A stretch of 64,000 bases of DNA, taken from contig NIVC01001498.1 in assembly GCA_002269645.1 (NCBI GenBank), positions 124,001-188,000 on the forward strand. Direction: 5' to 3'. The notes beneath the pieces are model-generated. The model was not told where the DNA came from and searched no databases. It saw only the letters and a program-made list of their open reading frames with translations. The position numbers were made by a program, and so were the translations under genes. Positions within the stretch are counted from its first letter, which is position 1. Each line of letters opens with the position of its first letter. This document shows, in pieces, positions 1 through 49,641 of the stretch. This DNA is from Macrostomum lignano (lineage: Eukaryota).

Positions 1-1189
1 TTGAGAGTAGGATAGGGTGAGATCGAGAGAAGGATAGGGTGAGATTGAGAGTAAGGATAGGGTGAGATTGAGAGAAGGATAGGGTGAGTTTGAGAATAGG
101 ATAGGGTGAGATTGAGAGTAAGGATAGGGTGAGTTTGAGAGAAGGATAGGGTGAGATTGAGAGTAAGGATAGGGTGAGATTGAGAATAGGATAGGGTGAG
201 ATTGAGAGTAAGGATAGGGTGAGATTGAGAGTAAGGATAGGGTGAGATTGAGAGTAAGGATAGGGTGAGATTGAGAGAATGATAGGGTGAGATTGAGAGT
301 AAGGATAGGGTGAGATTGAGAATAGGATAGGGTGAGATTGAGAGTAAGGATAGGGTGAGATTGAGAGTAAGGATAGGGTGAGATTGAGAGAAGGATAGGG
401 TGAGATTGAGAGTAAGGATAGGGTGAGATTGAGAGAAGGATAGGGTGAGATTGAGAGTAAGGATAGGGTGAGATTGAGAGTAAGGATAGGGTGAGATTGA
501 GAGTAAGGATAGGGTGAGTTTGAGAATAGGACAAAGTGAGATTGAGAGTAAGGATAGGGTGAGATTGAGAGAAGGATAGGGTGAGATTGAGAGTAAGGAT
601 AGGGTGAGTTTGAGAATAGGATGGGGTGAGATTAAGAATAAGGATAGGGTGAGTTTGAGAATAGGATAGGGTGAGATTGAGAGTAAGGATAGGGTGAGAT
701 TGAGAGAAGGATAGGGTGAGATTGAGAGTAAGGATAGGGTGAGATTGAGAGAAGGATAGGGTGAGATTGAGAGTAAGGATAGGGTGAGTTTGAGAGAAGG
801 ATAGGGTGAGATTGAGAGAAGGATAGGGTGAGATTGAGAGTAGGATAGGGTGAGATTGAGAGTAGGATAGGGTAAGATTGAGAGTAGGATAGGGTGAGAT
901 TGAGAGTAGGAAACGGTGAGATTGAGAGATTAGGATAGGGTGAGATTGAGAGTAGGATAGAGTGAGATTGAGAGTACCATAGGGTGAGATTCAGAGCAGG
1001 ATAGGGTGAGATTGAGAGTAGGATAGGGTGAGATTGAGAGAAGGATAGGGTGAGATTGAGAGTAAGGATAGGGTGAGATTGAGAGTAAGGATAGGGTGAG
1101 TTTGAGAATAGGATAGGGTGAGATCGAGAATAGGAAAGGGTGAGATTGAGAGTAGGATAGGGTGAGATTGAGAGCAGGATAGGGGTGAG
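1..1189. repeat. 22-23-bp minisatellite (GAGATTGAGAGTAAGGATAGGGT)n, probably intronic, truncated by the window start
   Basis: Visible tandem periodicity, ~50 copies; ends ~60 nt upstream of an acceptor AG at 1252-1253. Confidence 0.95.
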
Positions 1190-1253
1190 ATGAGATATGA
1201 GATAGACAGCAGGCACTCGGTAACTAATTCATCCAATTGCCACCCGCAAACAG

Positions 1254-3518: not shown

Positions 3519-3935
3519 TATACATGTAAATCTATAATAACGTTTTTACCTGATAGAGTAACGTTTATTAAGCACCATCAATCTATGTACAATGTACATC
3601 GTATAAGTAAAAGAGTGATGACGTCACACTTGGAAATGAACCCGTGGGTTGTCGTGCATAAATTATTCAGAGGTCCGTTTATCCAGTGACTATACATGTA
3701 TTATGATACTATTAGTAGTATAGCTGCCGATATAGATTCCGTCTGCATAGATTGGACTGCAGGGCCATTCAGAATGCCCAACGAATCACAGTTAAGGATT
3801 TTTATATTCGATAAAATTCAGCTTTGTGCATGATATATACGGCTGAAATACACAGCTGTATTTGAAGCAAATCGAGAGTGTTGGATCGTCCATTTTGGTA
3901 ATATTTTCTTAGAAAGCCAATCAATCATCATAACC

Positions 3936-4585
3936 ATGATGTCGCTAGCTGGAACAAATCGATCCTGGAAGCTGCTGATTGTAGCTCTCTGTGCTGCTTG
4001 TCTGATCGAGTTCGGAGACTCTCATGCTGGTAGGTCTTTGTTCAAGAAAATGGACCATGCGTTTTTTCTAAAAAAGCTTTGTATCAAGTTTGACTGAGCA
4101 GAAAATTTTCTCACTAGACGATTTGTAATTTACGTTTCAGTTTGTTCCGACCACATCAATTTGCACTACTGCTACTCGTGTGAGTACTTCCATACTTGTA
4201 CATGGTAATGTGATGCTCTAGTTGTTTTTTAGTCATTTAACTCGCGGTCGAAATACTTCGCAGGGAATGTTAAACGAGCTCTGAAGAGCGCTGTCCATGA
4301 CTCCCAGGGCTCGCTAGATGAGCCGATGACAATTGGAAACCAGGTAGACCTGCAACACCTGCTATTAGCCAGACTCAAGGCTTACAAACGCCTGGTAAGT
4401 GATGTCTCTATTAATAGTCTTTACCTATTAAGACGAAGACAACGATAACCACCACATGGCCAATCCCACAGGATCCAATATGGCCGCTGTCTTATGAGTT
4501 GCAAGTTGCACCGTATGAGTTTGATGAGACGGCAATGCAAGATGAAATCGAACCTGGGACGACTAACGGAATTGGCTCGCGTTAA
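3936..4585 (+). CDS. Secreted neuropeptide precursor, 125 aa, 4 exons (3936-4029, 4141-4179, 4264-4394, 4472-4585); cyclic C-x8-C peptide with elevenin/L11-like architecture
   Basis: Three GT-AG introns (donors GTAGGT, GTGAGT, GTAAGT; CAG acceptors) with matching phases 1,1,0. Product: MMSLAGTNRSWKLLIVALCAACLIEFGDSHA-VCSDHINLHYCYSWNV-KR-ALKSAVH...AY-KR-LDPIWPLSYE...GSR*. AATAAA at 4611 and 4681. Confidence 0.8.
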
Positions 4586-5100
4586 GAAGACTGAGAGTTA
4601 CAGAGAATGGAATAAACCAATATTTTTGAGAAGTAAATCTGGTGTAATTCGATCAACTAATTATCGTTTGTTAGAGAACGAATAAAATCGGATATGAACT
4701 ATGAGTAGCGCTGTTGCAAAAAATACTGTTTGGTTTCTTTACCTACTAGTAGCAAGTGTATCACTACTCGTAAAGTTGGCAGTCTATTTTACTTTATCAA
4801 TCAGCACAATCTATCTATCAGCATAGATAAAGGTCATACAAAGGACGGGCTGAAATCGCTATTGTAAGAATGGGTGACTGCCACAGACAAGAGGCTTATT
4901 TCTTATTTTGATCGATTTTTAACAAGTTGTAACAAGTTCTAAATGCTGTTGCTCATTAACGGAAGCGCCAATCGAAAAAAAATGCAGGAAACAAAACTTA
5001 TGAATGTTGACTATCAGCATGTGCAGTTGCTAGGAAACAGGAGACAGTTTTGTACGGCAGTTTTGGATTAAAATTCGACCTGTTACATTTGCACTATGAG

Positions 5101-5660
5101 ACAGATGAGACTCGGGCGGAGGGGTAGAGATTCAAATATCAACGTACATTTCGATAGGCCTTCATGCCCACAGACGAGGATCAGACGAGAGAGGGGTAGA
5201 GATTCAAATATCAATGTACATTTCGATAGGCCTTCATGCCCACAGACGAGGATCAGACGAGAGAGGGGTAGAGATTCAAATATCAATGTACATTTCGATA
5301 GGCCTTCGCTTCATGCCCACAAACGAGGATCAGACGAGAGAGGGGTAGAGATTCAAATATCAATGTGCATTTCGATAGGCCTTCATACCCACAGACGAGG
5401 ATCAGGCGAGGGAGGGGTAGAGATTCAAATATCAATGTACATTTCGATAGGCCTTCATGCCCACAGACGAGGATCAGACGAGAGAGGGGTAGAGATTCAA
5501 ATATCAATGTACATTTCGATAGGCCTTCATGCCCACAGACGAGGATCAGGCGAGGGAGGGGTAGAGATTCAAATATCAATGTACATTTCCATAGGTCTTC
5601 ATGCCCACAGACGAGGATCAGGCGAGGGAAGGGTAGAGTTTTAAGTATCAATGTACATTT
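5101..5660. repeat. 72-bp tandem repeat, ~7.5 copies
   Basis: GGGGTAGAGATTCAAATATCAATGTACATTTCGATAGGCCTTCATGCCCACAGACGAGGATCAG recurs every 72 nt (t5125, t5197...). Confidence 0.95.
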
Positions 5661-6482: not shown

Positions 6483-6974
6483 TCAGACATTGAAACTTTC
6501 GCCGCAACCGCAGGTACCTTTAGCGTTGGGATTATAGAAGACAAACTCGCTAACTAGCGGACCCTTCACGTAGTCCATCTCTGTGCCTAGCAGTGTGAGC
6601 TGAGCCTTCCGATCGATGTAGACCGTCACCCCGTCCTGTTCAACCGTCTCGTCCATGGCCGCTTTCTCGCTGGCATAGTCCAGCGTATACGACAGTCCAT
6701 TGCATCCTCTTGTTCTGACGCCAATTCTCAACGCTTTAGCTGAACCGTTGGATTCGGCCAGTGCAGCTTTGACTCGATCAACAGCCGCTTGGGTGAGGGT
6801 TAGCGGCGATCGGGTTGGTCGGAAATTCGGCCCACGACCGGGTATTACTGTGGCCGATAGGCCAGAAGCCAAGCATCGGATAGTTTGCTGCTGATGAAAT
6901 AGCGAATTGGCTGATAGGGCTCTGCACAGGCCGACAAGCCTCAGTGATGATGATGCAACCCGATGTGGCAGCAT
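6483..6974 (-). CDS. ISCA1: Iron-sulfur cluster assembly 1 homolog, mitochondrial (A-type Fe-S carrier), single exon, 163 aa
   Basis: Conserved RTRGCNGLSYTLDY, GTEMDY and C-terminal CGCGESF motifs; Arg/Ser/Leu-rich N-terminal presequence. Confidence 0.97.
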   Translation of the reverse strand: MLPHRVASSSLRLVGLCRALSANSLFHQQQTIRCLASGLSATVIPGRGPNFRPTRSPLTLTQAAVDRVKAALAESNGSAKALRIGVRTRGCNGLSYTLDYASEKAAMDETVEQDGVTVYIDRKAQLTLLGTEMDYVKGPLVSEFVFYNPNAKGTCGCGESFNV

Positions 6975-11175: not shown

Positions 11176-12717
11176 TCAAACAGATCTGCAATGCTCGCAA
11201 CTGTCCATCTCTAAGACATGCGGCTCAACTTGAAGAGTCACGTCCGACATTTGAAAAATCTTCTTAGACAGCTCCGTCGCCTTGACAACAAGATTGTCGC
11301 GTTGCACTACGCCGCAATTGGAGTTAACAACTAGATGAGCGCTGGCCACATTGCGGCCAAGAGTCAGACTCCAAACTCGAAGGCTGTGCACTTGAATCAC
11401 GCAGGGTAGCGCAGCCAGAGCGGCTCGGAACTTGGCCACATCGATGCCCTGGGGAGTGGCCTCCAGCAGCACTCGGACAGTGTCCTTCAGTATGCTCACT
11501 GTAGTTCCCAACACTAGCAGCGAGAATACGAACGTGCATATCGGATCGGCCAGTTTATAATCCGGTTGATAGTAAATGATAAGAGCCGCTACTAATACAC
11601 CAATGCTTTGCAATAAGTCGCCAATAACGTGTATGAAGGCGGCGCGAACGTTCATATTGTTGTGAGCGTGATTGTGACCGAAACTGCTGCCAATGTGCTC
11701 GTGATGATGATCGTGCTCGCCGTGCTCCTGATGCTCATGATCGCCAGCATGATGCTCAGGACGCCTGCGTCTCCGTTGACAATCCCGTTCAACAATGCCA
11801 GCAGTGTCGGCTGCATCCACATCGACTGGTTCCGGCGGCTCTTCTTCATCGTCTTTATCAACCGTGGACTGGGAAGACGAATCCGCGGCGACAGCTGCGG
11901 GACCGTCAGCCTGACAATTCTGACGCTGCAATCCGTGCGAATGTCCGTGACCCTGGTGTAACAGCAACGCCATCAACATGTTGAATGCTACGCCAACACC
12001 TGCCGTGATTAGCATGGCTTCACCTTCGACTTCGAAATCTTTTTGGACAACCCGATGCACAGCCATATAGACTAGCACAGCTGTGACTATCCAAATCATC
12101 AGAACGGACACCAGAGCTCCAATCACTTCGGCTCGATACCAACCAAAACTCATTCTTCTACTAGGCCTCTTAGTGGCCAGGAACAGAGCTAATAAGCTGA
12201 TGAGAAAACTAGTCAGATCCGTTAACAGATGAGCAGCGTCAGTCATTATAGCCAAACTATTGGCTATAGCGCCGCCAATCACCTCTCCGATCATGAAGAC
12301 TAGACAGGCTACGGCTGCAATTACCAGGCGTCGGCGAGCAAGTTTCTGCGCGGCAATGTAACGAAATCGACGTTCAGTTTCGCCGCTATGACAATGCCGG
12401 GTACTGCTGGTGCTACAATCTAGACTGTTGGCCAGTTCGTCGCCAGGTTGACACTGGATTTGCAAACTGAACTGCATGTCAGATGACGACATGAGTGCTG
12501 GGGTAAGCGGTGGTTGCGGCTGCTGCTGCTCAGCCGCGTTCGATGCCTGTTGATGATGCTGGAAATGATGATGACGGAGATGTTGATATTGATGACGATG
12601 ATAGGTAGCCGATTGCGTAATCAGCAGCGGTGTTCGCTCATCGCCATCTGGCGCAGTATCAGCTGCTGGTGGATCCAAGTCTCTACTATCACCACCTAGC
12701 AGGTCATTGCTGTCCAT
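11176..12717 (-). CDS. SLC30A2: Cation diffusion facilitator zinc transporter (ZnT2/3/4/8 vesicular clade), single exon, 513 aa
   Basis: SLAIMTDAAHLLTD (TM2), NVRAAFIHVIGDLLQSIGV (TM5), ADPICT, His-rich loop, and C-terminal VHSLRVWSLT...TLQVE domain; the exact paralog is uncertain. Confidence 0.93.
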   Translation of the reverse strand: MDSNDLLGGDSRDLDPPAADTAPDGDERTPLLITQSATYHRHQYQHLRHHHFQHHQQASNAAEQQQPQPPLTPALMSSSDMQFSLQIQCQPGDELANSLDCSTSSTRHCHSGETERRFRYIAAQKLARRRLVIAAVACLVFMIGEVIGGAIANSLAIMTDAAHLLTDLTSFLISLLALFLATKRPSRRMSFGWYRAEVIGALVSVLMIWIVTAVLVYMAVHRVVQKDFEVEGEAMLITAGVGVAFNMLMALLLHQGHGHSHGLQRQNCQADGPAAVAADSSSQSTVDKDDEEEPPEPVDVDAADTAGIVERDCQRRRRRPEHHAGDHEHQEHGEHDHHHEHIGSSFGHNHAHNNMNVRAAFIHVIGDLLQSIGVLVAALIIYYQPDYKLADPICTFVFSLLVLGTTVSILKDTVRVLLEATPQGIDVAKFRAALAALPCVIQVHSLRVWSLTLGRNVASAHLVVNSNCGVVQRDNLVVKATELSKKIFQMSDVTLQVEPHVLEMDSCEHCRSV

Positions 12718-19028: not shown

Positions 19029-19079
<51 letters not shown>

Positions 19080-19390
19080 GGCACAGACAGACACAAAGGC
19101 AGACACACTAAGGCAGACAGACAGGCACAGACAGGCAGACAGAGACAGACACAGACAGACAGACAGACAGACAGACACAGACAGACAGACAGGCAGACAG
19201 ACAGACACAGACAGACAGGCACAGACAGACAGACACAGACAGACAGACAGACAGACAGACACAGACAGACAGACAGACACAGACAGACAGACAGACAGAC
19301 AGGCACACAGACACAGACAGACAGGCAGACAGACAGGCAGACAGACAGACACAGACAGACAGACAGACAGACAGACACAGACAGACAGAC

Positions 19391-19437
<47 letters not shown>

Positions 19438-19548
19438 GGCAGACAGACAGACAGACAGACAGACAGGCAGACAGACAGGCACAGACAGACAGACACAGAC
19501 AGACAGGCACAGACAGACAGACAGACACAGACAGACAGACACAGACAG
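19029..19548. repeat. (GACA)n microsatellite with variant units, ~150 nt downstream of the PTK7-like stop codon (probable 3' UTR)
   Basis: Direct reading; accounts for the SVCL/TDRQ ORFs. Confidence 0.97.
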
Positions 19549-19700: not shown

Positions 19701-20312
19701 TCACACGTCGGCCATATCCCTGGTGAGCTGCGACACCTCGGTCACAATCTGTCCGGCTGTTGGCCGTCTGTCCGCGGCCAGACTCCAGCACTTGTCTAGC
19801 ACAGGGGCCAGCTCAGTCGGACACGTGTCCGGTTGGTCCGGCCGAAATCCGGCCGCAGCCGAAACTGCCGCGGCCGACGAAGCGGCAGCCGCTGCGGCCG
19901 CGTTGGCAGCTGCGGCGAGCAGCTCGGAGTCGCTGAGTCGGGCGAACGGCCGCCGGCCCATGCCGAAGACTTCGCAGACGAGGACGCCGAAGGACCAGAC
20001 GTCCGTTTTGATGCCGAACTGGCCGTAGGCGGTGGCCTCCGGCGGCAGCCAGCGAATCGGCAGCAGGGTGCCCTGGCTGCTGCGGGCGTACTGACCGGTG
20101 AACCGGTCCAGACAGGGGCCCAGGTTGGTCAGCTTCAGGTTGTACTCCTGAGCGACTAGGACATTGCGACAGCCGATGTCGCCGTGAACGAAGCCGAGAC
20201 AGTGCATGTGCTCCAATGCCTGGGCTACTTGGAGGCACATTCGCACCAGGTGATCTTTGGATAAGTGCTCGCCATGCTTTTTAAGGCCGGTTAGTACTTC
20301 GAACAGGTTGTT
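19701..20312 (-). CDS. PTK7: PTK7-like last exon (kinase C-lobe, stop TGA)
   Basis: Acceptor GCGCAG|AAC; NNLFEVL...[11 protein letters not shown]...KLTNLG...[10 protein letters not shown]. Confidence 0.92.
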
Positions 20313-23300
20313 CTGCGCGTTTCGGGTGATGGGAGGAATGATAATGAAAGTAATGAAAGTAGGGATTCCATTTTTTGGATATCCTAATGGTTACTAACAA
20401 ATCCCAAGCCACACCTGTTGGAGCCCAGTTCCAATACCTCTTGAGATCCCAATCCTCATCCATAAGTTCCCAATCGTCATCCCGAAGATCCCAATCCTCA
20501 TCCCGAAGATCCCAATCCTCATCCCGAAGATCCCAATCCTCATCCCGAAGATCCCAATCCTCATCCCGAAGATCCCAATCCTCATCCCTAAACCCCAATC
20601 CTCATCCATAAGATCCAATCGTCATCCCGAAGATCTCAATCCTCATCCCGAAGATCTCAATCCTCATCCCTAAATCCCAGTCCTCATCCATAAATCCCAG
20701 TCCTCATCCCTAAATCCCATTCCTCATCCCTAAATCCCATTCCTCATCCCTAAACCCCAATCCTCATCCATAATATCCCAATGGTCATCCCGAAGATCTC
20801 AATCCTCATCCATAATATCCCAATCCTCATCCATAATATCCCAATCCTCATCCCGAAGATCACAATCCTCATCCCGAAGATCACAATCCTCATCCATAAT
20901 ATCCCAATCCTCATCCCGAAGATCACAATCCTCATCCCGAAGATCACAATCCTCATCCCGAAGATCCCAATCCTCATCCCGAAGATCCCAATCCTCATCC
21001 CGAAGATCCCAATCCTCATCCCAAAGATCACAATCCTCATCCCGAAGATCACAATCCTCATCCCGAAGATCACAATCCTCATCCCGAAGATCCCAATCCT
21101 CATCCCGAAGATCCCAATCCTCATCCCAAAGATCACAATCCTCATCCCGAAGATCACAATCCTCATCCCGAAGATCCCAACACTTATTTTTATATCCTAG
21201 TCCTCCTCCCTAAATTCCAATATTGTTTCACAGCTCCCAGTTCTCATAAATAAAGGTGAAAAGCTACGCCAAATCCCAATTCGACCCAGTTACTCACATA
21301 TTCGCAGTACTCCAGCAGCATGAGCGGAGCCTCCATCGGGTTGCTATCAATGCAGATTCCGACAAAGCGAGTGACATAATCGTGATCGCATTTGTTGAAT
21401 AATTTCATCTGTTCAACGAATTGGGCTGTCAATTGAGGATCGTCGGTGGTCAGCTCCTTGATCAGCACCGTGGCACCGTTTAGAGTGCCGATACGGACTG
21501 TGCCAAATAGGCCGCGACCTGGTGAACAGTGTTTTGTGATAGGAATTTTCCATGTATACTACTTGTCAAGCGTGGTCAGTAGCGAAAGTAGGGTTTTACG
21601 CTATCTTATTGACTTTAAGCTACATAATTTATTAATATTATCTACTCGCTCGCTCTTACAGCATATAGCAACTGTATAGTATAGTTGTAAGTACTGTATA
21701 GTACTGTAATGTATAGCATATTCATTTCTTTACTTTTCATCTTCTATATGTCTGTCTTTGAACATCTCTACATCTATTTCTGATATCTATATATACATTC
21801 CCTATATATATCTACTAACGATTTATCTCCAATATCTATAAACTATCTGCAATATCTAGAACAACGATCTGCAATATCAATCAACGATATGCAATATTTA
21901 TCAACGATCTGCAATATCTATCAAAGACCTGCAATATCTACCAACGATCTGCAATATCTAAGAACGATCTACAATATCTATCAAGGATCTGCAATATCTA
22001 CCAACGATCTACAATATCTAAGAACGATCTTCAATATCTATCAACGATCTGAAATATCTACCAACGATCTGCAATATCTAAGAACGATCTTCAATATCTA
22101 TCAACGATCTGCAATATCTAAGAACGATCTACAATATCTATCAAGGATCTGCAATATCTACCAACGATCTACGATATCTAAGAACGATCTTCAATATCTA
22201 TCAACGATCTGAAATATCTACCAACGATCTGCAATATCTAAGAACGATCTTCAATATCTATCAACGATCTGCAATATCTAAGAACGATCTACAATATCTA
22301 TCAAGGATCTGCAATATCTACCAACGATCTGCAATATCTAAGAACGATCTTCAATATCTATCAAGGATCTGCAATATCTACCAACGATCTGCAATATCTA
22401 AGAACGATCTGCAATATCTATCAACGATCTGCAATATCTACCAACGATCTGCAATATCTATCAACGATCTGCAATATCTAAGAACGATCTTCAATATCTA
22501 TCAAGGATCTGCAATATCTACCAACGATCTGCAATATCTAAGAACGATCTTCAATATCTATCAACGATCTGCAATATCTAAGAACGATCTGCAATATCTA
22601 TCAACGATCTGCAATATCTAAGAACGATCTGCAATATCTATCAACGATCTGCAATATCTAAGAACGATCTACAATATCTATCAACGATCTGCAATATCTA
22701 TCAAGGATCTGAAATAACTGAAAATACAGTTGCACTCACCCAGAATCCCAGGCCTGTACTGAATGAGCTTCCTATCTGTCTGATGGGTTCGGCAGAGCCG
22801 GTCCAGAGTAGTCTCAATAATGGAATTAGCGGGAGTATTAGTTCTCAACCGGCCATATGTAGACTGCAACGAGCTGCTGATGCCGCTAACACTGTTGCCG
22901 TCGTAGATGAGGTCGGCTCTCGGCGGGCTGTACCTGCCGCTCTGGCTCAGCAGAGTCTTGTACTCCGGCTGCAGCTGTTGCAGAGACCTGCCCGATTCGG
23001 CTGACTCATAATAGCCTCCGCCAACTCCGCCAGGTGAGTCGCGAAGCCGATTCATAAACAGGTGCTGCTGCTGCTGCTGCTGTGGCGGCTGCTGATGCTG
23101 TTTCTGCTTTTTAGCGGCTCCGCTATTGCTGAAGCCATTACTGGTCAGCATGGTGGAAGTTGCTGCGCAGGTCAACATTGGCTGCTGCTGAGGATGGACG
23201 AACTGCTGCTGTTGCTGTTGCTGCTGTTGCTGCTCCTGCAGCTGCATGTTGTCCGATCGTTTCTGCCGCTTCTGCTGCATCCTCAGTGTACAGCAGATCG

Positions 23301-26300
23301 ATAAGAACACGATGAGGCCCAGGTAGCCGACAGCGCAGCTCACCACTATGATGACAGTTTTCATCATGGAATTCTTGTCAGACGAACCCGACGCTTCGCC
23401 AGCGTTGGGGTCCAGGACGCGAAGGTGCACAGTGTGCTTATTAGGCATGAGGATGTACACAGTGGCCGCTAGGCACTGATACTCCCCGGCGTGGCCCATT
23501 GTAGCCCGATGAATGATCAGCGTGCCATTGGGGAATAGGAACAGATTTCTGGTCTTTTCCAAGTCCTCCCGGCGCAGGCTGTCAGCTGTGAGCAGGCGGC
23601 TGCTGTTGTCGCGCTTGAACATGTCCTGCGTGATCGCCGTGGGTCGGTAGTCGCCGACGCCGCCGCCGCTGCCGAACGGACGAAACGTCCAGGTGATGGT
23701 CGGCCTCGGATCGCCGGTCACCTCGCAGTCGAGGCGAACAGTGTCGCCCAGTTCCACCGTTGTGTTCGGCGAGATGCGCCGGAAGACAGGCTTGGCGCCG
23801 ACCTCAACGTTGAAGATCTTCTCTAGCCGGCCCTGCGGTCCCTCGGCAACTATTCTGTACTGGCCGCGCATCTCCTTCGAGACGTAGTGAAAGGTGAGCC
23901 GCGTGCCGTCTGGGCTCAGCTCGATGCCGCCGCTGCCGCCGCCGCCCGACAGGGTGTCGACTGGAATCGACTGGAATGCGTCGCCCGGGCCTGAGCGCCT
24001 GGACCAGCTGATCCTGGGAGCGTACTCGCCCGACCAGGGGCAGTCTAGAGTCTCTTGCACCTGGATGCCAGTGTGGGATTCTTCTATTGTTAGTGGATTT
24101 GGCTTCTATAGATTATTGGAATCAATCAAATGTGCTCAAGACTGGGATCAATGAATGGACTGAAGATTGGGATCAATCAATGTGCTCAAGACTGGGATCA
24201 GTGAATGTGCTCAAGACTGGGATCAGTGAATGTGCTCAAGACTGGGATCAGTGAATGTGCTCAAGACTGGGATCAGTGAATGTGCTCAAGACTGGGATCA
24301 GTGAATGTGCTCAAGACTGGGATCAGTGAATGTGCTCAAGACTGGGATCAATGAATGTGCTCAAGACTGGGATCAGTGAATGTGCTCAAGACTGGGATCA
24401 ATGAATGTGCTCAAGACTGGGATCAGTGAATGTGCTCAAGACTGGGATCAGTGAATGTGCTCAACACTGGGATCAGTGAATGTGCTCAAGACTGGGATCA
24501 ATGAATGTGCTCAAGACTGGGATCAGTGATTTGCAACAAAGACAGCAAAGAGACTCGCCTTCAGCTCCAGCTGCACAGCAGAATTCTTAGCCGGGCACAA
24601 CTGAAATTTCCTTTTCACGCTCAGGGTAATATTGCCGGAAGAGTCGCTCTTCTCCGACACGGGGGTGCCCAGATCGTCTAGTCGGGTCACGGCCAGACAG
24701 GCGTACACTCCGGCGTGGTGCAGCGACACGGACTGGAAGGTCAGGGCTCCGTCAGGACTGACTCTGTAGCTTTTCGCCGCCGTCGGCATGCCGATAGCCG
24801 ACGAGGCGACAACGGCAGAGTCAGCGCCGGAATCTGGTGCAGAACTCGAGCTGGCCACTAGCACAGGCAGACTGGAGCCCTGTGTGTACTTGTACCAGTC
24901 GAATTTGGTTAGCTGTGTCACTACATTTCCAGGACTGTAGGGACAGGCAATTGTCAAGCCTTTATCGTCCTCGGTGGCTACTTTACTGACGGGCACTTTG
25001 CTCAGCGTGGGCGGGTAGGTCACCAGCAGGCTTAGCGGCATCTCGCTGCTGCCGGCCGGGTTCTCCAGCCGAATGGTGTAGGTGCCGCTGTCCGACTTGC
25101 GGGCCGAGTCCAGCTAGCCGAGTGGGACAGACAGACGCTTTTTTAGTGAAGCTGATACCGGTACTTGAATTTTGGAGGCGCGATTGGGGGGCAGAGGAGG
25201 GAGAGGGAAAGGGAAAGACATGAAGGCGGGAAGGGAGGGGAAGACAGGAGGGGAAGAGGGGAAGGCAGGAGGGGAAAAGGGAAGGCAGGAGGGGAAGAGG
25301 GGAAGACAGGTGTAAAGAGGGGAAGGCAGGAGGCAAAGAGAGGAAGACAGGAGGGGAACAGGGGAAGGCAGGAGGGGAAGAGGGGAAGGCAGGAGGAGAA
25401 CAGGGGAAGACAGGAGGGGAACAGGGGAAGGCAGGAGGAGAACAGGGGAAGACAGGAGGAGAACAGGGGAAGGCAGGAGGGGAAGAGGGGAAGGCAGGAG
25501 GAGAACAGGGGAAGACAGGATGGGAACAGGGGAAGGCAGGAGGGGAACAGGGGAAGACGGAAGGCAAAGAGGGGAAGACAGGAGGGGAAGAGGGGAAGAC
25601 AGGAGGGGAAGAGGGGAAGACAGGAGGGGAAGAGGGGAAGGCAGGAGGGAACAGGGGAAGACAGGAGGGGAAGAGGGGAAGACAGGAGGGGAACAGGGGA
25701 AGGCAGGAGGGGAAGAGGGGAAGACAGGAGGGAACAGGGGAAGGCAGGAGGCAAAGAGGGGAAGGCAGGAGGGGAAGAGGGGAAGACAGGAGGGGAAGAG
25801 GGGAAGACAGGAGGGGAAGAGGGGAAGGCAGGAGGGAACAGGGGAAGACAGGAGGGGAACAGGGGAAGGCAGGAGGGGAAGAGGGGAAGACAGGAGGGGA
25901 AGAGGGGAAGGCAGGAGGCAAAGAGGGGAAGACAGGAGGGGAACAGGGGAAGACAGGAGGGGAACAGGGAAGGCAGGAGGGGAACAGGGGAAGGCAAGAG
26001 GGGAAGAGGGGAAGACAGCAGGGGAGAGCCGAACAGGCCACTATTTACCTGCAAATGATAGTCTCGAACAATTCGAACTCTGGCGCTAGGCGATTCGGAC
26101 TCTCTCGGCACTCGAGCGCCACCGGGAGCGGTCCAGGTGACGCTGGGCATGGGAATCCACTCTTGGCCGCTACTCTGGTCTCGGTAGGGCAGGTAGACCC
26201 GTTGAACAAATACGGAGTTGATTGGCACCAGCAGCGGCCGAAATGTCACTGGCGGCTCGAAGTTCTTGTTCCCGTCTAGGCCGGAGTTCTCTGAAATAAT

Positions 26301-29300
26301 AGGGGAGATTTGGAGAAAATTTAAGTAGTGAAGCATCACAGCATCCTCTTAGTGCCCCATCACAGCATCCCCTCAGTGTCCCATCACAGCATCTTTAATG
26401 CCCCATCACAGCATCCCCTCAGTGTCCCATCACAGCATCCTCCCAGTGCCCCATCACAGCATCACCTCAGTGCCCCATCACAGCATCCTTAATGCCCAAT
26501 TACAGCATCTCACAGCATCCCCTCAATGGCCCATCACAGCATCCCCTCAGTGGCCCATCACAGCATCCCCTCAGTGGCCCATCACAGCATCCCTCAATGC
26601 CTCATCACAGCATCCTTAGTGCCCCATCACAGCATCCTTAGAGTGCCCCATCACAGCATCCTTACAGTGTCCCATCACAGCATCCTCTCAGTGCCCCATC
26701 ACAGCAGCCCCTTAGTGCCCCATCACAGCATCCCCTTAGTGCCCCCATACGTCCTTAACAATAAAAACCTGAAAAAATGCTGCATATACTACTACTCACT
26801 TGTCTGCACAACCTCGTAGAGAAACTCGGCGGTGAACTGTGACTTCAGCAGCACCAGGCGGACAAGATAGAAATGGCTGGTCCCGGCAAACGCTTCGCTG
26901 ATGCGCAGCTTGGTGGTGTCGGAGCGCCAGCGGTTGTTGCGCAACTCAAGGCCCGACGTGGAGATCGATCGGTCGCTGACCGAGAGATTCGGTGTGCATG
27001 TTTTTAATTTAATAATCGCATTTTTAATCTATGGTATTTATCCCACAACATATTTCCCATTCTATTCCCCACTAATCTATTTATCCCCATTCTATCCTAC
27101 AATATTCCAATTATCCCCATTCTATCCCCCACTCCTCCATTTATCCTCATTCTATCCCCCACTCCTCCATTTATCCTCATTCTATCCCCACTCCTCCATT
27201 TATCCTCATTCTATCCCCCACTCCTCCATTTATCCTCATTCTATCCCCCACTCCTCCATTTATCCTCATTCTATCCCCCACTCCTCCATTTATCCTCATT
27301 CTATCCCCCACTCCTCCATTTATCCTCATTCTATCCCCCACTCCTCCATTTATCCTCATTCTATCCCCCACTCCTCCATTTATCCTCATTCTATCCCCAC
27401 TCCTCCATTTATCCTCATTCTATCCCCCACTCCTCCATTTATCCTCATTCTATCCCCCACTCCTCCATTTTTCCCATTTTATCCCCAAGGTCATTTTCAT
27501 CCGCAGCCTACCTGGAATCCATAACCATATCGATTTTCTTCCTATCAATATGCTGGTAGCCGAAGGCCTTCAGCGTGAACCAGAGCTTGTGATCGGACTC
27601 GTCAAGGTCAAATGTGGGCAGCCGAACTTTCTCGTCGTTGCGAACGTAGTGGACAGGATTGCCGAACTTACTCCCGATGCCTGCAGATGGGGCGTAGGGT
27701 GGGGGATTAGAGTAGCGTCTTGGGATTCATTTTTTTGGATTAGTATTTTGGATCTAGTATTTGGATAACTGGTAAACGGGTAAGGATTGGGATTATACTT
27801 GAATGGGATAAATTGGTGAGGATTGGGATGATACTAGAATGGGATAAACTGGTGAAAATTGGGATGATACTAGAATGGGATAAATTGGTGAGGATTGGGA
27901 TGATACTAGAATGGGATAAATTGGTGAGGATTGGGATGATACTAGAATGGGATAAACTGGTGAGGATTGGGATGATACTTGAATGGGATAAATTGGTGAG
28001 GATTGGGATGATACTAGAATGGGATAAACTGGTGAAAATTGGGATGATACTTGAATGGGATAAATTGGTGAGGATTGGGATGATACTAGAATGGGATAAA
28101 TTGGTGAGGATTGGGATGATACTAGAATGGGATAAATTGGTGAGGATTGGGATGATACTAGAATGGGATAAATTGGTGAGGATTGGGATGATACTAGAAT
28201 GGGATAAACTGGTGAGGATTTGGTACTTGGATAATACTGAATGGAATAAATTGGTGAGGATTGGGATGATACTTGAATGGGATAAATTGGTGAGGATTGG
28301 GATTATACTTGAATGGGATAAATTGGTGAGGATTGGGATTATACTTGAATGGGATAAATTGGTGAGGATTGGGATTATACTTGAATGGGATAAATTGGTG
28401 AGGATTGGGATGATACTGGAATGGGATAAATTGGTGAGGATTGGGATTATACTTGAATGGGATAAATTGGTGAGGATTGGGGTGATACTAGAATGGGATA
28501 AACTGGTGAAAATTGGGATGATACTAGAATGGGATGAATTGGTGAGGATTGGGTTAATACTGGAATGGGATAAATTGGTGAGGATTGGGATGATACTAGA
28601 ATGGGATAAATTGGTGAGGATTGGGATGATACTAGAATGGGATAAATTGGTGAGGATTGGGATGATACTAGAATGGGATAAATTGGTTAGGATTGGGTTA
28701 ATACTGGAATGGGATAAATTAGTGAGGATTTGGATGATACTGGAATGGGATAAATTAGTGAGGATTTGGATGATACTGGAATGGGATAAATTGGTGAGGA
28801 TTGGGATGATACTTGAATGGGATAAATTGGTGAGGATTGGGATGATACTGGAATGGGATAAATTGGTGAGGATTGGGATTATACTTGAATGGGATAAATT
28901 GGTGAGGATTGGGGTGATACTAGAATGGGATAAATTGGTGAGGATTGGGATGATACTAGAATGGGATAAATTGGTTAGGATTGGGTTAATACTGGAATGG
29001 GATAAATTGGTGAGGATTGGGATGATACTAGAATGGGATAAATTGGTTAGGATTGGGTTAATACTGGAATGGGATAAATTAGTGAGGATTTGGATGATAC
29101 TGGAATGGGATAAATTAGTGAGGATTTGGATGATACTGGAATGGGATAAATTGGTGAGGATTGGGATGATACTTGGATGGGATAAATTGGTGAGGATTGG
29201 GATGATACTGGAATGGGATAAATTGGTGAGGATTGGGATTATACTAGAATGGGATAAATTGGTGAGGATTGGGATGATACTAGAATGGGATAAATTGGTT

Positions 29301-32300
29301 AGGATTGGGTTAATACTGGAATGGGATAAATTGGTGAGGATTGGGATGATACTAGAATGGGATAAATTGGTGAGGATTGGGATGATACTAGAATGGGATA
29401 AATTGGTGAGGATTGGGATGATACTAGAATGGGATAAATTAGTGAGAATAGCCAGTTTTCACGTGAGCCGTTCTCACCGTCAAAGAACACGGGCAGGGGA
29501 CTCCTGGTGAGCACTTTTCCTCCGGTGGCCTCAACGTAGCAGTGATAAACACCGGAAAGAAGTTTTGTTAATTTTGTTATAACAAGCTGGCTGAGGCTCG
29601 GCTGCTGAAAGTCGCTTCCCATGGGAATGCACTCCGAATTGTTTCGCTGCTCATTTTGGCGGCACAGGCTGCGGGCGATATGGGAATACAGTATTAAAGC
29701 CTTTTGGTATACACGAGTCCACCGATAGGGCCTACCTCTTACTGAATTCAATTATCGAACTAATGTCCTGAATCTAACTGGTCCCCATCCCCATCAAAGA
29801 GCTAAACATCCCATCCCCATGCCGAATGATCCCATCCCCATCCCAAATGATCCCATCCCCATCCCAATGATCCCATCCCCATCCCATATGATCCCATCCC
29901 CATGCCGAATGATTCCATCCCCATCCCAAATGACCCTATCCCCATCCCAATTGATCCCATCCCCATCCCAATTGATCCATCCCCATCCCAATTGATCCAT
30001 CCCCATCCCAATTGATCCTATCCCCATCCCAATTGATCCATCCCCATCCCAATTGATCCTATCCCCATCCCAAATGATCCATCCCCATCCCAATTGATCC
30101 ATCCCCATCCCAATTGATCCTATCCCCATCCCAATTGATCCATCCCCATCCCAATTGATCCTATCCCCATCCCAATTGATCCATCCCCATCCCAATTGAT
30201 CCTATCCCCATCCCAAATGACCCTATCCCCATCCCAATTGATCCATCCCCATCCCAAATGACCCTATCCCCATCCCAATTGATCCATCCCCATCCCAATT
30301 GATCCTATCCCCATCCCAATTGATCCATCCCCATCCCAATTGATCCTACCCCCATCCCAATTGATCCATCCCCATCCCAATTGATCCATCCCCATCCCAA
30401 TTGATCCTATCCCCATCCCAAATGATCCATCCCCATCCCAATTGATCCATCCCCATCCCAATTGATCCATCCCCATCCCAATTGATCCATCCCCATCCCA
30501 ATTGATCCATCCCCATCCCAATTGATCCATCCCCATCCCAATTGATCCATCCCCATCCCAATTGATCCATCCCCATCCCAATTGATCCATCCCCATCCCA
30601 ATTGATCCATCCCCATCCCAATTGATCCATCCCCATCCCAATTGATCCTATCCCCATCCCAAATGATCCATCCCCATCCCAATTGATCCATCCCCATCCC
30701 AATTGATCCATCCCCATCCCAATTGATCCATCCCCATCCCAATTGATCCATCCCCATCCCAATTGATCCATCCCCATCCCAATTGATCCATCCCCATCCC
30801 AATTGATCCATCCCCATCCCAAATGATCCCATCCCCATCCCAAATGATCCCATCCCCATCCCAAATGATCCCATCCCCATCCCAAATCAATCCATCCCCA
30901 TCCCAAACGAACCCATTGCAATCCCAAATGATCTCATCAGTTATCAAATGAACCCATTGCAATCCCAAATGATCCCATCAGTTATCAAATGAACCATTGC
31001 AATCCCAAATGATCCCATCAGTTATCAAACGAACCCATTGCAATCCCAAATGATCCCAACCCCTTCCAATTCCCAAACGCGGAGGCAGTGGCACCCCTAC
31101 GCTCACATTTTGCCATTCAGGAACCAACGAACGCTGGTAGGGGGCTCCGACGCTTGCAGTTGGCATTCGAGCACCACTCGATCGTTCGACTTCAGCTGCA
31201 GATTCGTCGGCGGCTCGATCCGCGCCACAGTCACATTGGGATTCAGCCCTGAGGTGTAATAGCGTGTTTTGTTAGTGTTTGACCCCTTCCGACAAAGAGC
31301 TTCTTAGGAACAGTTGTTGTCTTTGTAATTCTTTCTCTTCAACTCCGTCTATCTTTTACCCGCCTGCCTACTTGCCCTCTGTTCCGTTCTCAGCGTATAA
31401 AAAGGAACAAGCAAGCATTGGGAAAGCCCTATGCTAAAGGGAAGGGAGCGGTGGAAGCAATAAAAGCCCTACGGTGCTAAATTTCCTACTGGAAGGAAAG
31501 AAACACTATAAAGGGTTATTTCTATACATATCTCTCTCAAGGCGACCTGTAAGTTTGATAGGGTCATAACGCAATAAAAGCTATAAGTAAAGGTAGGAAA
31601 AGAAGCCAGAACCCACCAGCCTACCTGTGTGACAAACCCGAGGAGAAAAACAGGCAAAATAAGCAAAAGAAAGAAGATGGCCATGTTTTACAATCCAGAA
31701 CAAAGACCTGCACAAAGCTTAGGAATAGATACATAACAAACGGTAAATAGGACAAATATATCATTGCTACGGTCAACCTTGAACAAACTGAATGCATGCC
31801 TTTAAGTTAGCGAGGCGCTAAATTTGAACTCTAAGCTAAGAGTGCATGAGCACATATTGAGTGCCATTATACAGAATCATTTGTTGAGGACTCGATGTCT
31901 CGAGGATTGGGATTCCGGTATTATTAGGATTCCAATAATTGGGATTTGTGTATTGAAGATTCGAATAGTGGGGATTCGAATAGTGGGGATTCGAATAGTG
32001 AGGATTCGAATAGTCAGGATTCGAATAGTGGGGATTCGAATAGTCAGGATTCGAATAGTGAGGATTCGAATAGTGAGGTTTCAAATAGTGGGGATTCAAA
32101 AAGTGAGGATTCAAAAAGTGAGGATTGGAATGCGGCTTTGTGGTCAAATATTTTAGCGGTTCGATAAATAGGGATTGAAATACAAATTTTTCTAATAATA
32201 ACTGGTCTTAGGAATGCAGCGAACCCCTCCAACAGGCAGAGAAGAGAAACTCATAGAGTCCTAGGCTAGTCTTAGAACTACTTAAAGCTTGAAGACTCCA

Positions 32301-35818: not shown

Positions 35819-36179
35819 TTCTTTGCAGCAACAAAGTGGCAGCAACAGCAACAAAAAAACAACAATAATCATATTGGCAGTAATAATCCTAAAGCAATAA
35901 TTTCTGCATAGGTGGTCGTATATTCCACCTGCACCCATTCGCACAGACAAGAAAATTCTTACGATTGATTAGCAAATCCGTGCCCTTTGATGACATTTTT
36001 GTTACATCAATACATTTATGCGTAATGATATGTTTAATGATACAACAAATAATGCAGAGACCGAGACGAGGATTTTAAGTTAAATGTCAACTTTTCAGAC
36101 GACGTGATAACGACACGCCATTCGAGACGTTGGTCGCTTTTAGCGATTTTCTTATCTTACTCCCCAACTCTTTTGGGAG

Positions 36180-36622
36180 CAATCTTACTCTCCCGCTCTC
36201 GTATCTTACTCTCCCGCTCTCGTATCTTACTCTCCCACTCTCTTATCTTACTCTCCCACTCTCTTATCTTACTCTCCCACTCTCTTATCTTACTCTCCCA
36301 CTCTCTTATCTTACTCTCCCACTCTCTTATCTTACTCTCCCACTCTCTTATCTTACTCTCCCACTCTCTTATCTTACTCTCCCACTCTCTTATCTTACTC
36401 TCCCACTGTCGTATCTTACTCTCCCACTCTCTTATCTTACTCTCCCACTCTCTTATCTTACTCTCCCGCTCTCTTATCTTACACTCCCACTGTCGTATCT
36501 TACTCTCCCACTCTCTTATCTTACACTCCCACTCTTATCTTACTCTCCCGCTCTCTTATCTTACTCTCCCGCTCTCTTCTCTTACACTCCCACTCTCTTA
36601 TCTTACTCTCCCACTCTCTTAT
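36180..36622. repeat. 21-bp minisatellite (CTTACTCTCCCACTCTCTTAT)n
   Basis: Tandem periodicity. Confidence 0.95.
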
Positions 36623-47305: not shown

Positions 47306-47854
47306 TGATACTTAATCATTACTTTGAGCCTAATAATTTTTATTCAGCTATGCAGAAGCTTGATACCCACTCAGGCAAAAAACAGAAAGACAGATGGGTG
47401 GAAAACTTCCAAATAGCTAAGGATAAACAGAAGGTAACCCTTGGTCCCGAATTCGGCAGTCTTCTCCGTCTTGCCCCGCTGTCTGGCATCTGTGCCTGAA
47501 TTTTCCATCTCTTTGCCCAGAATGATTTCAGCATTCGAGTTATAGATTCAACATTTACACTTGGGACTGGCAGTCCCAACTTCTATCCAATCCCCAATAC
47601 CGCTCCCCAGCCAAAAATGCCAAATTGCCAAAAACTCCGGAGAGCTGGCTATAAATTTCTATGCTAAAGGATCCGCGCTCGCGCCAATGCCCGGCGGGAT
47701 GGGATAATACGCTCGTACAAGGGGAGATATTAAAAGAATAACCCCGTTTTTTAATGCTAAACAGATTGCTACGCCTGCCACAGATCATGGACTTTTTGAA
47801 CTCTCACTTGGACTAGACAGACGGACAGACAATAAGACAGACAGAAAGACAGAT

Positions 47855-48165
<311 letters not shown>

Positions 48166-48587: not shown

Positions 48588-48920
<333 letters not shown>

Positions 48921-49607: not shown

Positions 49608-49641
<34 letters not shown>

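What the first reader, a model, noticed from the sequence alone, without database searches (positions are those of the whole stretch)
3936..4585. Hidden four-exon neuropeptide precursor: new cyclic peptide with elevenin-type spacing
Seen: the gene is absent from the ORF track, but three canonical introns join in frame to give a 125-aa prepropeptide. A 31-aa signal ends in S-H-A and is followed directly by VCSDHINLHYCYSWNV, then KR, a spacer, a second KR, and an acidic tail. Established: elevenin/L11 (Aplysia) and C. elegans SNET-1 place a C-x8-C peptide right after the signal peptide, with about five residues before a dibasic site. Here the spacing is C-x8-C-x5-KR, but the ring sequence (SDHINLHY) is unlike the FxFAP elevenin core. 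Inference: a highly divergent elevenin ortholog or a new disulfide-cyclised neuropeptide family.
Basis: partly seen in the sequence, partly recalled or inferred. Interest (0 to 1): 0.8.

Follow-up and report, generated by a model that had tools for sequence, protein, structure and literature searches.

The report
Flatworm cyclic-peptide precursor gene, family unassigned
The four-exon gene is real and already annotated without a function in the flatworm Macrostomum lignano.

Summary
Exons 3936-4029, 4141-4179, 4264-4394 and 4472-4585 join through GT-AG introns into a 125-aa product. That product is 100% identical to GenBank PAA71192.1 (Macrostomum lignano, "hypothetical protein"; UniProt "Secreted protein"), from a transcript-derived annotation.

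The exons are constrained. They show 0/378 differences from a sister copy, against 60/872 in introns and flanks. Two older paralogue types in the same genome keep the same four-exon layout, including the 39-nt microexon. Between paralogues only HAVCxDxxNLHYCYxWNV-KR-AL is conserved (pN 0.08-0.11, pS 0.90-0.93), while the signal peptides have diverged freely (pN 0.67).

So this is most likely a prepropeptide whose product is an N-terminal C-x8-C cyclic peptide released at KR and not amidated.

Elevenin membership fails. None of the family's conserved non-Cys residues is present, and the profile score is no better than shuffles. The same C-x8-C-x5-KR layout also defines spiralian excitatory peptide/CCHamide. 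The peptide shares that family's invariant His and Asn (p 0.02-0.05, post hoc) but lacks its Gly, Trp, Gly-Gly and amidation Gly, so membership is not shown.

No relatives were found outside M. lignano. Neuronal expression, processing and receptor are untested. Interest is moderate.

The parts
3882..3935 (+). 5' UTR, minimum extent, contiguous with the genome
   Evidence: The 'partial' GenBank model P0002 of a sister copy starts with WIVHFGNIFLESQSIIIT-MMSLAG. This is the in-frame translation of the window sequence just upstream of the ATG.
3936..4029 (+). Exon 1 (94 nt): start codon and signal peptide MMSLAGTNRSWKLLIVALCAACLIEFGDSHA, plus the first base of Val32. It ends in phase 1.
   Evidence: The hydrophobic core is at residues 13-24 (9-residue Kyte-Doolittle mean up to 3.1). 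UniProt names the protein 'Secreted protein'. Exon 1 of the paralogues is also 94 nt.
4030..4140 (+). Intron 1 (111 nt, GT..AG, phase 1)
   Evidence: Introns differ from the sister copy at 12/272 positions, exons at 0/378.
4141..4179 (+). Exon 2: a 39-nt microexon (phase 1/1) encoding (V)CSDHINLHYCYS(W), which is the whole C-x8-C ring
   Evidence: A 39-nt exon at the same position and phase is present in paralogues B1 (L002 14394-14432) and B2 (L003 9075-9113). There is one copy per locus.
4180..4263 (+). Intron 2 (84 nt, GT..AG, phase 1)
4264..4394 (+). Exon 3 (131 nt): the end of the peptide (W)NV, the KR site, the spacer ALKSAVHDSQGSLDEPMTIGNQVDLQHLLLARLKAY, and the second KR followed by L
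   Evidence: Intron 3 lies at the same place (phase 0, after Y-x-R-x) in the paralogues.
4272..4277 (+). Lys48-Arg49: the conserved dibasic processing site right after the cyclic peptide
   Evidence: Invariant in all paralogues, although every codon here differs synonymously between A and B1.
4386..4391 (+). Lys86-Arg87: second dibasic site, specific to this paralogue, inside the conserved L-[KR]-[AS]-Y-[KL]-R motif
   Evidence: B1 and B2 have Y-L-R-Q here, so cleavage at this site is not a conserved feature.
4395..4471 (+). Intron 3 (77 nt, GT..AG, phase 0)
4472..4585 (+). Exon 4: acidic C-terminal tail DPIWPLSYELQVAPYEFDETAMQDEIEPGTTNGIGSR and the TAA stop
   Evidence: In the 38 residues after the second KR there are 8 Asp/Glu and 1 Lys/Arg. 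This region is not conserved in the paralogues.
4611..4616 (+). AATAAA polyadenylation-signal candidate. A second one lies at 4681-4686.
   Evidence: This is sequence only; usage was not tested.

Best explanation
This is a real, transcribed Macrostomum lignano gene. It is one of at least three paralogue types of a small gene family so far seen only in this species. It encodes a secretory prepropeptide.

Proposed mechanism:
1. The N-terminal signal peptide directs the product into the secretory pathway.
2. The two cysteines, eight residues apart, form one disulfide bond.
3. A prohormone convertase cuts after the conserved Lys-Arg, and a carboxypeptidase trims those two residues.
4. This releases a non-amidated cyclic peptide of about 16-20 residues, (..HA)VCSDHINLHYCYSWNV.
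5. The peptide is the functional product and acts as an intercellular signal (neuropeptide or peptide hormone), probably through a GPCR.

The rest of the precursor is a fast-evolving spacer.

Shown here: the gene model, transcript-based annotation, a hydrophobic N-terminus, conservation and purifying selection focused on the peptide plus KR, and the conserved exon structure.

Inferred: the signal-peptide cleavage point, disulfide formation, convertase processing, the signalling role and the cell type.

Ancestry is unresolved. The layout is the one shared by spiralian elevenin and excitatory peptide/CCHamide, but membership of neither family is demonstrated.
For: - The gene model translates cleanly with canonical splice sites.
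- The product is identical to GenBank PAA71192.1 and UniProt A0A1I8I1R3 'Secreted protein'. The GenBank annotation derives from genome-guided transcript assembly and TransDecoder (PMC5730564).
- Exons are 0/378 different from the sister copy L001, against 60/872 for introns and flanks (p=3e-10). Against L005 the figures are 4/378 and 52/872 (p=4e-5).
- Paralogues B1 (P0005) and B2 (P0006) were found by an exhaustive phmmer search and share only residues 26-53.
- All three types have a 94-nt exon 1, a 39-nt microexon and phase-1 introns.
- In the peptide region H30-L51, A vs B1 gives pS 0.90 and pN 0.08, and A vs B2 gives pS 0.93 and pN 0.11. The signal peptide gives pN 0.67 (the 31-residue window gave 0.62). 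B1 vs B2 peptide gives pS 0.59 and pN 0.04.
- KR is invariant.
- There is no Pfam domain, no PDB relative and no confident fold (mean pLDDT 46). This fits a processed precursor rather than a folded protein.
Against: - There are no data on which cells express it. The gene IDs are absent from the neoblast/germline and reproduction-related supplementary tables that could be searched, and that is only weak evidence.
- No mass-spectrometric evidence for the peptide exists.
- No homologue was found outside M. lignano.
- There is no amidation signal, which many but not all neuropeptides carry.
- The signal-peptide cleavage site is uncertain: the paralogues have A-P-H-A|V, with Pro at -3.
- Conservation of a short Cys-loop peptide next to KR would look the same for a secreted toxin, antimicrobial peptide or seminal-fluid peptide.
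Confidence: 0.55

Rival explanations
1. It is the divergent flatworm orthologue of excitatory peptide (EP)/CCHamide (GGNG peptide). It would be the ligand of the CCHamide/endothelin-type GPCR and would have lost the Gly-Gly motif and C-terminal amidation.
For: - Spiralian EPs have exactly the same layout: a single copy directly after the signal peptide, then C-x8-C-x3-N-x-KR (PMC12969411; PMC6617912 Additional file 1).
- In a gapless alignment with 13 spiralian EPs, the invariant columns are Cys1, His at Cys2-2, Cys2, Asn at Cys2+4, and K-R.
- PMC6617912 states that all spiralian EPs share this Asn and that an aromatic residue, and often a His, lies in the ring.
- The profile score beats shuffles: z 1.8-2.5, p 0.02-0.05.
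- The derived orthonectid EP (C-L-S-A-N) shows the Gly-Gly can erode.
Against: - It lacks the invariant Lys before Cys1, Gly at ring position 2, Trp at ring position 4, the Gly-Gly/Gly-Ala after Cys2 and the amidation Gly.
- Even the most divergent accepted EPs score z about 6 in leave-one-out tests.
- The hhalign score (22, P 0.004, probability 8%) equals that of the EP-versus-elevenin control, which is noise level.
- The comparison was chosen after seeing the similarity, and two families were tested, so p about 0.02-0.05 is not significant.
Confidence: 0.15
2. It is a highly divergent elevenin (L11) orthologue.
For: It has C-x8-C directly after the signal peptide and five residues before KR, as in elevenins.
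Against: - None of the conserved non-Cys residues is present. These are D/N at -1 (41 of 42 sequences), F/Y at ring position 5 (42 of 42), P at ring position 7 (36 of 42), R after Cys2 (41 of 42) and G next (42 of 42).
- These residues matter for receptor activation in Aplysia (PMC10175484).
- The profile score is below the shuffle mean (z -0.2 to -0.8).
- hhalign gives no alignment (probability 0.05%).
Confidence: 0.04
3. It is a secreted effector peptide made by a non-neuronal gland, for example an antimicrobial or defensive peptide or a seminal-fluid or other gland product, and not a neuropeptide or hormone.
For: - It is lineage-restricted and has multiple copies with rapidly evolving pro-regions.
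- The same signal peptide / Cys-loop peptide / KR architecture is used by toxins and antimicrobial peptides (general knowledge).
- Elevenin-like peptides are themselves recruited into cone-snail venom (PMC10175484).
- There is no amidation signal.
Against: - The mature peptide is strongly conserved between old paralogues (pN 0.04-0.11 with saturated or high pS). Effector peptides under arms-race selection usually show the opposite pattern: conserved signal and pro-region, variable mature peptide.
- The peptide is near-neutral (pI about 6) and not cationic-amphipathic.
- The gene IDs are absent from the searchable reproduction-related gene tables (weak evidence).
Confidence: 0.18
4. It is a small secreted protein that is not cleaved. 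The disulfide would be structural and the KR incidental.
For: Processing has not been observed.
Against: - Outside residues 30-51 and a six-residue motif, the paralogues are essentially unalignable and differ in length (105-125 aa).
- AlphaFold2 finds no confident fold (mean pLDDT 46, pTM 0.28).
- KR is invariant despite synonymous changes at every codon.
Confidence: 0.06

Closest known systems
Excitatory peptide / CCHamide (GGNG peptides) of spiralians, e.g. Aplysia KCHGRWAIHACFGGN-NH2 and Platynereis KCSGQWAIHACAGGN-NH2
   Same: - One peptide copy directly after the signal peptide.
- Two Cys eight residues apart.
- His two residues before Cys2, and an aromatic residue in the ring.
- Asn four residues after Cys2, then one residue, then Lys-Arg.
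- A long, poorly conserved, acidic pro-region with a basic helical motif near the end.
   Different: - No Lys before Cys1.
- No Gly at ring position 2 and no Trp at ring position 4.
- Ser-Trp instead of Gly-Gly.
- Val instead of the amidation Gly, so the C-terminus is a free acid.
- Similarity is statistically marginal.
Elevenin / L11 (Aplysia RPRIDCTRFVFAPACRGVSA; C. elegans SNET-1/ELVP-1 LDCRKFSFAPACRGIML)
   Same: - One copy directly after the signal peptide.
- C-x8-C with five residues before the dibasic site.
- Not amidated.
   Different: - All conserved ring and tail residues differ: D/N-C, F/Y at position 5, P at position 7, C-R-G.
- There is no profile similarity above shuffles.
Generic invertebrate prohormones with a single N-terminal disulfide-loop peptide, such as allatostatin-C and CCAP
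   Same: The processing logic is the same: signal peptide, Cys-loop peptide, dibasic cleavage, and a dispensable pro-region.
   Different: - Ring sizes differ (x6 and x5).
- There is no sequence similarity.
- These were recalled from knowledge and from the discussion in PMC10175484, not tested here.

Membership tests
Elevenin / L11 | Two cysteines separated by exactly eight residues | tested here: met
   C33-x8-C42. The definition is from PMC10175484.
Elevenin / L11 | A single peptide copy at the N-terminus of the pro-protein, followed about five residues after Cys2 by a dibasic site | tested here: met
   ..SHA|VC..C-YSWNV-KR, compared with the precursors.
Elevenin / L11 | Arg-Gly immediately after Cys2. 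R is present in 41 of 42 and G in 42 of 42 reference peptides, and both are critical for receptor activation. | tested here: not met
   The sequence here is C-Y-S in A and B1 and C-Y-A in B2.
Elevenin / L11 | Aromatic F/Y at ring position 5 and Pro at ring position 7 (the FxP core), with Asp/Asn before Cys1 | tested here: not met
   Asn, His and Val occupy these positions (column table).
Elevenin / L11 | Overall similarity to the family profile above chance | tested here: not met
   z -0.2 to -0.8 against 20,000 shuffles on two reference sets. hhalign probability is 0.05%.
Elevenin / L11 | Activates an elevenin-type GPCR | not testable with these tools
   Needs a receptor assay.
Excitatory peptide / CCHamide | Two conserved cysteines (eight apart in trochozoan members), with a single copy directly after the signal peptide | tested here: met
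Excitatory peptide / CCHamide | Asn at the C-terminal position (Cys2+4) in all spiralian members, with an aromatic residue and often a His in the ring | tested here: met
   N46, H40 at Cys2-2, and Y41. These are invariant columns in the joint alignment. The criterion is from PMC6617912.
Excitatory peptide / CCHamide | C-terminal amidation signal (Gly before the dibasic site) | tested here: not met
   Val47 precedes KR in all paralogues.
Excitatory peptide / CCHamide | Gly-Gly or Gly-Ala between Cys2 and the C-terminus. In the C-x8-C members, also Lys before Cys1, Gly at ring position 2 and Trp at ring position 4. | tested here: not met
   The sequence here has S-W (A-W in B2), Val, Asp and Ile/Val at these positions (column table).
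Excitatory peptide / CCHamide | Overall similarity to the family profile above chance | tested here: inconclusive
   z 1.8-2.5, p 0.02-0.05, post hoc, while true divergent members score z about 6. The hhalign score of 22 equals the EP-vs-elevenin control.
Excitatory peptide / CCHamide | Activates an EP/CCHamide-type GPCR | not testable with these tools
   Needs a receptor assay.
Neuropeptide / peptide-hormone precursor (generic) | N-terminal signal peptide | tested here: met
   There is a hydrophobic core at residues 13-24 preceded by Arg and Lys. UniProt names the protein 'Secreted protein'. The exact cleavage site was not determined because SignalP was not available.
Neuropeptide / peptide-hormone precursor (generic) | Conservation concentrated in a short peptide bounded by a basic cleavage site | tested here: met
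Neuropeptide / peptide-hormone precursor (generic) | Expression in neurons or endocrine cells, and detection of the mature peptide | not testable with these tools
   No expression or peptidomic data could be reached. The gene IDs do not appear in the searchable literature.

The most novel reading that the evidence does not exclude
The peptide is the flatworm representative of the ancient disulfide-loop ligand group to which both excitatory peptide/CCHamide and elevenin belong. The receptors of those two families are related to each other (PMC5818035), and in spiralians their ligands share the identical signal-peptide / C-x8-C-x5-KR layout. On this reading the peptide is the cognate ligand of that GPCR clade in Platyhelminthes, so diverged that only the scaffold plus His and Asn survive. 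It would be the first handle on this signalling system in flatworms, and a case of near-complete ligand sequence turnover on a fixed scaffold.
Probability: 0.2. Interest if true: 0.6.

Novelty: new member of a known kind. Interest (0 to 1): 0.35.

Why it matters
Flatworm neuropeptides are notoriously diverged, and few disulfide-cyclised ones are described. M. lignano is a transgenic, early-branching flatworm model. A conserved, paralogue-supported cyclic peptide with the EP/elevenin scaffold gives a concrete candidate ligand that can be synthesised. It could then be tested on the orphan rhodopsin-type GPCRs of flatworms, including parasite orthologues if the family extends beyond Macrostomum.

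The case also illustrates two practical points:
- The whole bioactive peptide sits on a 39-nt microexon that at least one automatic gene model skipped.
- Cys spacing and position alone cannot assign a peptide to elevenin, because EP/CCHamide has the same geometry.

If it proves to be a gland effector instead, it is an ordinary lineage-specific secreted peptide.

Tried and rejected
- Pfam scan of the precursor at E<=10 found nothing.
- A PDB sequence search with the family profile gave only noise.
- AlphaFold2 on the 4-sequence alignment gave mean pLDDT 46, which is uninformative beyond 'no compact fold'. No fold search was attempted on such a model.
- The word-indexed protein search and the exhaustive phmmer search over 1.84 billion representatives found only M. 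lignano proteins. One further hit, P0007, is spurious: a 741-aa repeat protein matched through the signal-peptide region.
- The last protein search used a joint EP+Macrostomum core alignment. It retrieved 6 candidates and none scored. It did not even recover known EPs, so the test was uninformative, not negative.
- The metagenome scan by back-translated motifs gave 277 pattern matches and no relative. One motif spanned an exon junction. A second scan with an intra-exon pattern (CxDxxNLHYCY) gave 8 matches, all chance.
- Literature searches for the gene IDs, the UniProt accession and a peptide word found no paper.
- Text searches of the supplements of the planarian prohormone paper and of the roughly 1,300 spiralian proneuropeptides of Thiel 2021 for 4-6-residue words of the peptide found no relative.
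- The gene IDs are not in the supplementary tables of two M. lignano expression papers.
- McVeigh 2009 (flatworm npp families) is not held.
- One literature search was too broad and gave nothing useful.
- Rejected: that the window is the GenBank contig itself. It is 94-99% identical, so it is another copy or assembly.
- Not resolved: the C-terminal L-[KR]-[AS]-Y-[KL]-R motif resembles by eye the C-terminal basic helices of both EP and elevenin precursors, but hhalign does not support any link.

Full report
**Observation.**
- An ATG at 3936 opens a 94-nt exon.
- Three introns (4030-4140, 4180-4263, 4395-4471) begin with GT(A/G)AG-type donors and end in AG preceded by pyrimidine-rich tracts.
- The exons, of 94, 39, 131 and 114 nt, join into a 378-nt CDS.
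- Its 125-aa product is MMSLAGTNRSWKLLIVALCAACLIEFGDSHA-VCSDHINLHYCYSWNV-KR-ALKSAVHDSQGSLDEPMTIGNQVDLQHLLLARLKAY-KR-LDPIWPLSYELQVAPYEFDETAMQDEIEPGTTNGIGSR.
- AATAAA motifs follow the stop codon at 4611 and 4681.

**Organism and annotation status.**
- The product is 100% identical over its full length to GenBank PAA71192.1, 'hypothetical protein BOX15_Mlig018733g1' of the free-living flatworm Macrostomum lignano. It is also identical to UniProt A0A1I8I1R3, 'Secreted protein'.
- The gene therefore lies in M. lignano. The matching GenBank locus is on contig NIVC01001181.1 of assembly GCA_002269645.1.
- That annotation was produced from RNA-seq mapped with STAR, StringTie/TACO assemblies and a de novo transcriptome, with CDSs called by TransDecoder (PMC5730564). 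So an identical CDS there means spliced transcripts with these junctions were assembled.
- The gene is therefore not 'hidden'. It is annotated but has no function assigned, and no paper in the searchable library mentions it.
- The window is not the GenBank contig itself. It is 94-99% identical to that contig and to a second syntenic copy, NIVC01002736.1, which carries Mlig023371g2.
- Both copies have the same neighbours as the window, an IscA-type Fe-S protein and a ZnT/CDF zinc transporter.

**The exons are under constraint.**
- Against the first GenBank copy, the four exons show 0 differences in 378 nt, while the introns plus 300-nt flanks show 60 in 872 (Fisher p=3e-10).
- Against the second copy the figures are 4/378 and 52/872 (p=4e-5).
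- The boundaries of conservation coincide with the proposed exon boundaries.

**A small gene family.**
- An exhaustive phmmer search of 1.84 billion representative proteins found, besides the query, two further M. lignano proteins: P0005 (Mlig002632g1, 'B1') and P0006 (Mlig031250g1, 'B2'). They match only over residues 26-53.
- A fourth hit, P0007, is a repeat-driven artefact.
- The alignment shows that conservation is confined to three elements: H-A-V-C-[STA]-D-[HG]-[IV]-N-L-H-Y-C-Y-[SA]-W-N-V-K-R-A-L; a generic hydrophobic signal peptide; and a short L-[KR]-[AS]-Y-[KL]-R motif.
- The remainder is unalignable, and total lengths range from 105 to 125 aa.
- All three types share the gene architecture: a 94-nt exon 1 ending in phase 1, a 39-nt microexon carrying the ring, a second phase-1 intron, and a phase-0 intron after Y-x-R-x.
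- Nei-Gojobori counts for H30-L51 give pS 0.90 and pN 0.08 for A vs B1, pS 0.93 and pN 0.11 for A vs B2, and pS 0.59 and pN 0.04 for B1 vs B2.
- For the signal peptide, A vs B gives pN 0.67 (the 31-residue window gave 0.62).
- Synonymous sites are saturated while the peptide is held almost constant. This is the signature of a precursor whose functional product is that peptide.

**Inferred mechanism.**
- The N-terminus has a basic n-region and a 12-residue hydrophobic core.
- Cleavage after S-H-A would give VCSDHINLHYCYSWNV once Lys48-Arg49 has been cut by a convertase and trimmed.
- There is no Gly before KR, so the peptide would end as a free acid.
- The two Cys would close a 10-residue ring.
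- The calculated monoisotopic mass is 1951.83 reduced.
- The exact N-terminus is uncertain. The B paralogues read A-P-H-A|V, and Pro at -3 is unfavourable for signal peptidase by the classical (-3,-1) rule. The conserved His-Ala may therefore belong to the mature peptide.
- The second KR exists only in this paralogue.
- AlphaFold2 gives no confident fold (mean pLDDT 46). There is no Pfam or PDB match. Both fit a processed precursor.
- Signal-peptide cleavage, disulfide formation, convertase processing and a signalling role are inferences.

**Elevenin test.**
- PMC10175484 defines elevenins by two Cys eight residues apart. It identifies D5, F11, P13, R16, G17 and V18 as conserved and functionally important.
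- I used its table of predicted or identified elevenins (30 used here) and 12 nemertean, brachiopod and phoronid precursors from PMC8557429.
- The conserved columns are D/N before Cys1, F/Y at ring position 5, Pro at ring position 7, and Arg-Gly after Cys2 (R in 41/42, G in 42/42).
- The Macrostomum peptide has V, N, H and Y-S at those positions.
- With the cysteines held fixed, its BLOSUM62 profile score is below the mean of 20,000 shuffles of its own residues (z -0.2 to -0.8, p 0.55-0.79).
- hhalign against the elevenin precursors aligns only 'KR' (probability 0.05%).
- Spacing and position are met, but every other defining feature tested is not. Membership is not supported.

- It also has a single copy directly after the signal peptide (PMC6617912).
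- Its tail x-G-G-N-G-KR places the dibasic site five residues after Cys2, so the geometry is identical.
- In a gapless alignment of the three Macrostomum peptides with 13 spiralian EPs, the invariant columns are Cys1, His (Cys2-2), Cys2, Asn (Cys2+4), Lys and Arg.
- The profile score exceeds shuffles (z 1.8-2.5, p 0.02-0.05).
- However, the invariant Lys, Gly, Trp, Gly-Gly and amidation Gly are all missing.
- Accepted divergent EPs, such as the orthonectid one, score z about 6.
- The hhalign score (22, probability 8%) is the same as for the EP-versus-elevenin control.
- I made this comparison after noticing the resemblance.
- The resemblance is therefore a lead and not a demonstration. What it does show firmly is that the C-x8-C-x5-KR layout cannot by itself point to elevenin.

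**Relatives elsewhere.**
- None was found in the two protein collections.
- None was found in JGI metagenome contigs (the eight pattern matches are chance).
- None was found in the planarian prohormone supplements or among roughly 1,300 spiralian proneuropeptides.
- These resources contain little flatworm transcriptome data. At this database size a 20-residue match needs near identity to reach significance. So absence is weak evidence.
- A final profile search was technically uninformative.

**Alternatives.** A gland-derived effector peptide (antimicrobial, defensive or seminal-fluid) would share the precursor logic and the lineage restriction.
- Against it: the mature peptide is the conserved part and the pro-region the variable part.
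- Against it: the peptide is not cationic (pI about 6).
- Expression data are lacking.
- An uncleaved small secreted protein is unlikely, given the conservation pattern and the lack of a predicted fold.

**Verdict.**
The elevenin reading is not supported. The 'new cyclic peptide precursor family' reading is supported as a candidate.
- I file it as a new member of a known kind: prohormone-type precursors of N-terminal disulfide-loop peptides. Its ancestry is unresolved, with a weak lean towards EP/CCHamide.
- Interest is moderate. It is a well-supported, testable candidate ligand in a tractable flatworm. It is also an already-annotated gene, known from one species, with no functional data.

Noticed in passing
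window 3636-4885 compared with L001 and L005: The window is not identical to either GenBank Mlig_3_7 copy of this locus (94-99% identity). The exons are identical to L001, while introns and flanks differ by about 7%. So the window is another copy, haplotype or assembly of a locus that exists in at least three near-identical versions.
   Followed up: partly
L002 6001-6094, 14394-14432 and 14541-14680 (paralogue B1); protein P0008: A UniProt model of paralogue B (A0A1I8HT83) skips the 39-nt microexon and reads APHA-G-NVKR, so it lacks the whole cyclic peptide. The microexon is phase 1/1, so skipping keeps the reading frame. This could be a gene-prediction miss or real alternative splicing that switches the peptide off.
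   Followed up: partly
L002 / L003 (contig NIVC01001937.1, about 175-195 kb): Paralogues B1 and B2 lie in divergent orientation on either side of two protein-kinase genes. Their exon 1 and 5' UTR are 100% identical in nucleotides, although their peptide exons have pS 0.59. B1 has an 8.3-kb first intron against 0.9 kb in B2. This suggests an inverted duplication or gene conversion of the promoter and first exon, or an assembly or annotation artefact.
   Followed up: partly
window 4371-4391 (ARLKAYKR) and the equivalent in P0005 and P0006: An L-[KR]-[AS]-Y-[KL]-R motif is the only conserved element of the pro-region. By eye it resembles the basic C-terminal motifs of elevenin precursors (Phoronis 'LIKRLRSYNARR') and of EP precursors. 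Profile comparison did not support a link.
   Followed up: partly
window 1-1195, 5119-5660, 19029-19548, 20444-22716, 24129-31058, 35042-38616, 41215-44304, 46707-53828, 55908-62266: More than 30 minisatellite arrays fill a large share of the window. Unit lengths are mostly 20-25 nt, with others of 36, 39 and 69 nt, and there are up to 188 copies. They generate most of the long 'ORFs' in a mechanical ORF list, and they explain the strong local GC-skew swings.
   Followed up: partly
window 6486-6974(-), 11179-12717(-), 19704-20246(-), 22684-24060(-), 24526-25041(-): The neighbouring genes are an IscA-type Fe-S assembly protein, a ZnT/cation-diffusion-facilitator zinc transporter (a single 513-aa exon with a His-rich loop), the C-lobe exon of a tyrosine kinase, and Ig-domain (I-set/V-set) exons of a probable cell-surface protein.
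   Followed up: partly
protein P0007 (not in the window): This 741-aa multi-pass membrane protein of unknown origin has at least eight exact tandem copies of a 35-residue unit (VVSTIVTYEVVLIQFGDFEPPVATNSSLPSYCRTW). It matched the query's signal-peptide region eight times, which inflated its score. It is a false positive.
   Followed up: no
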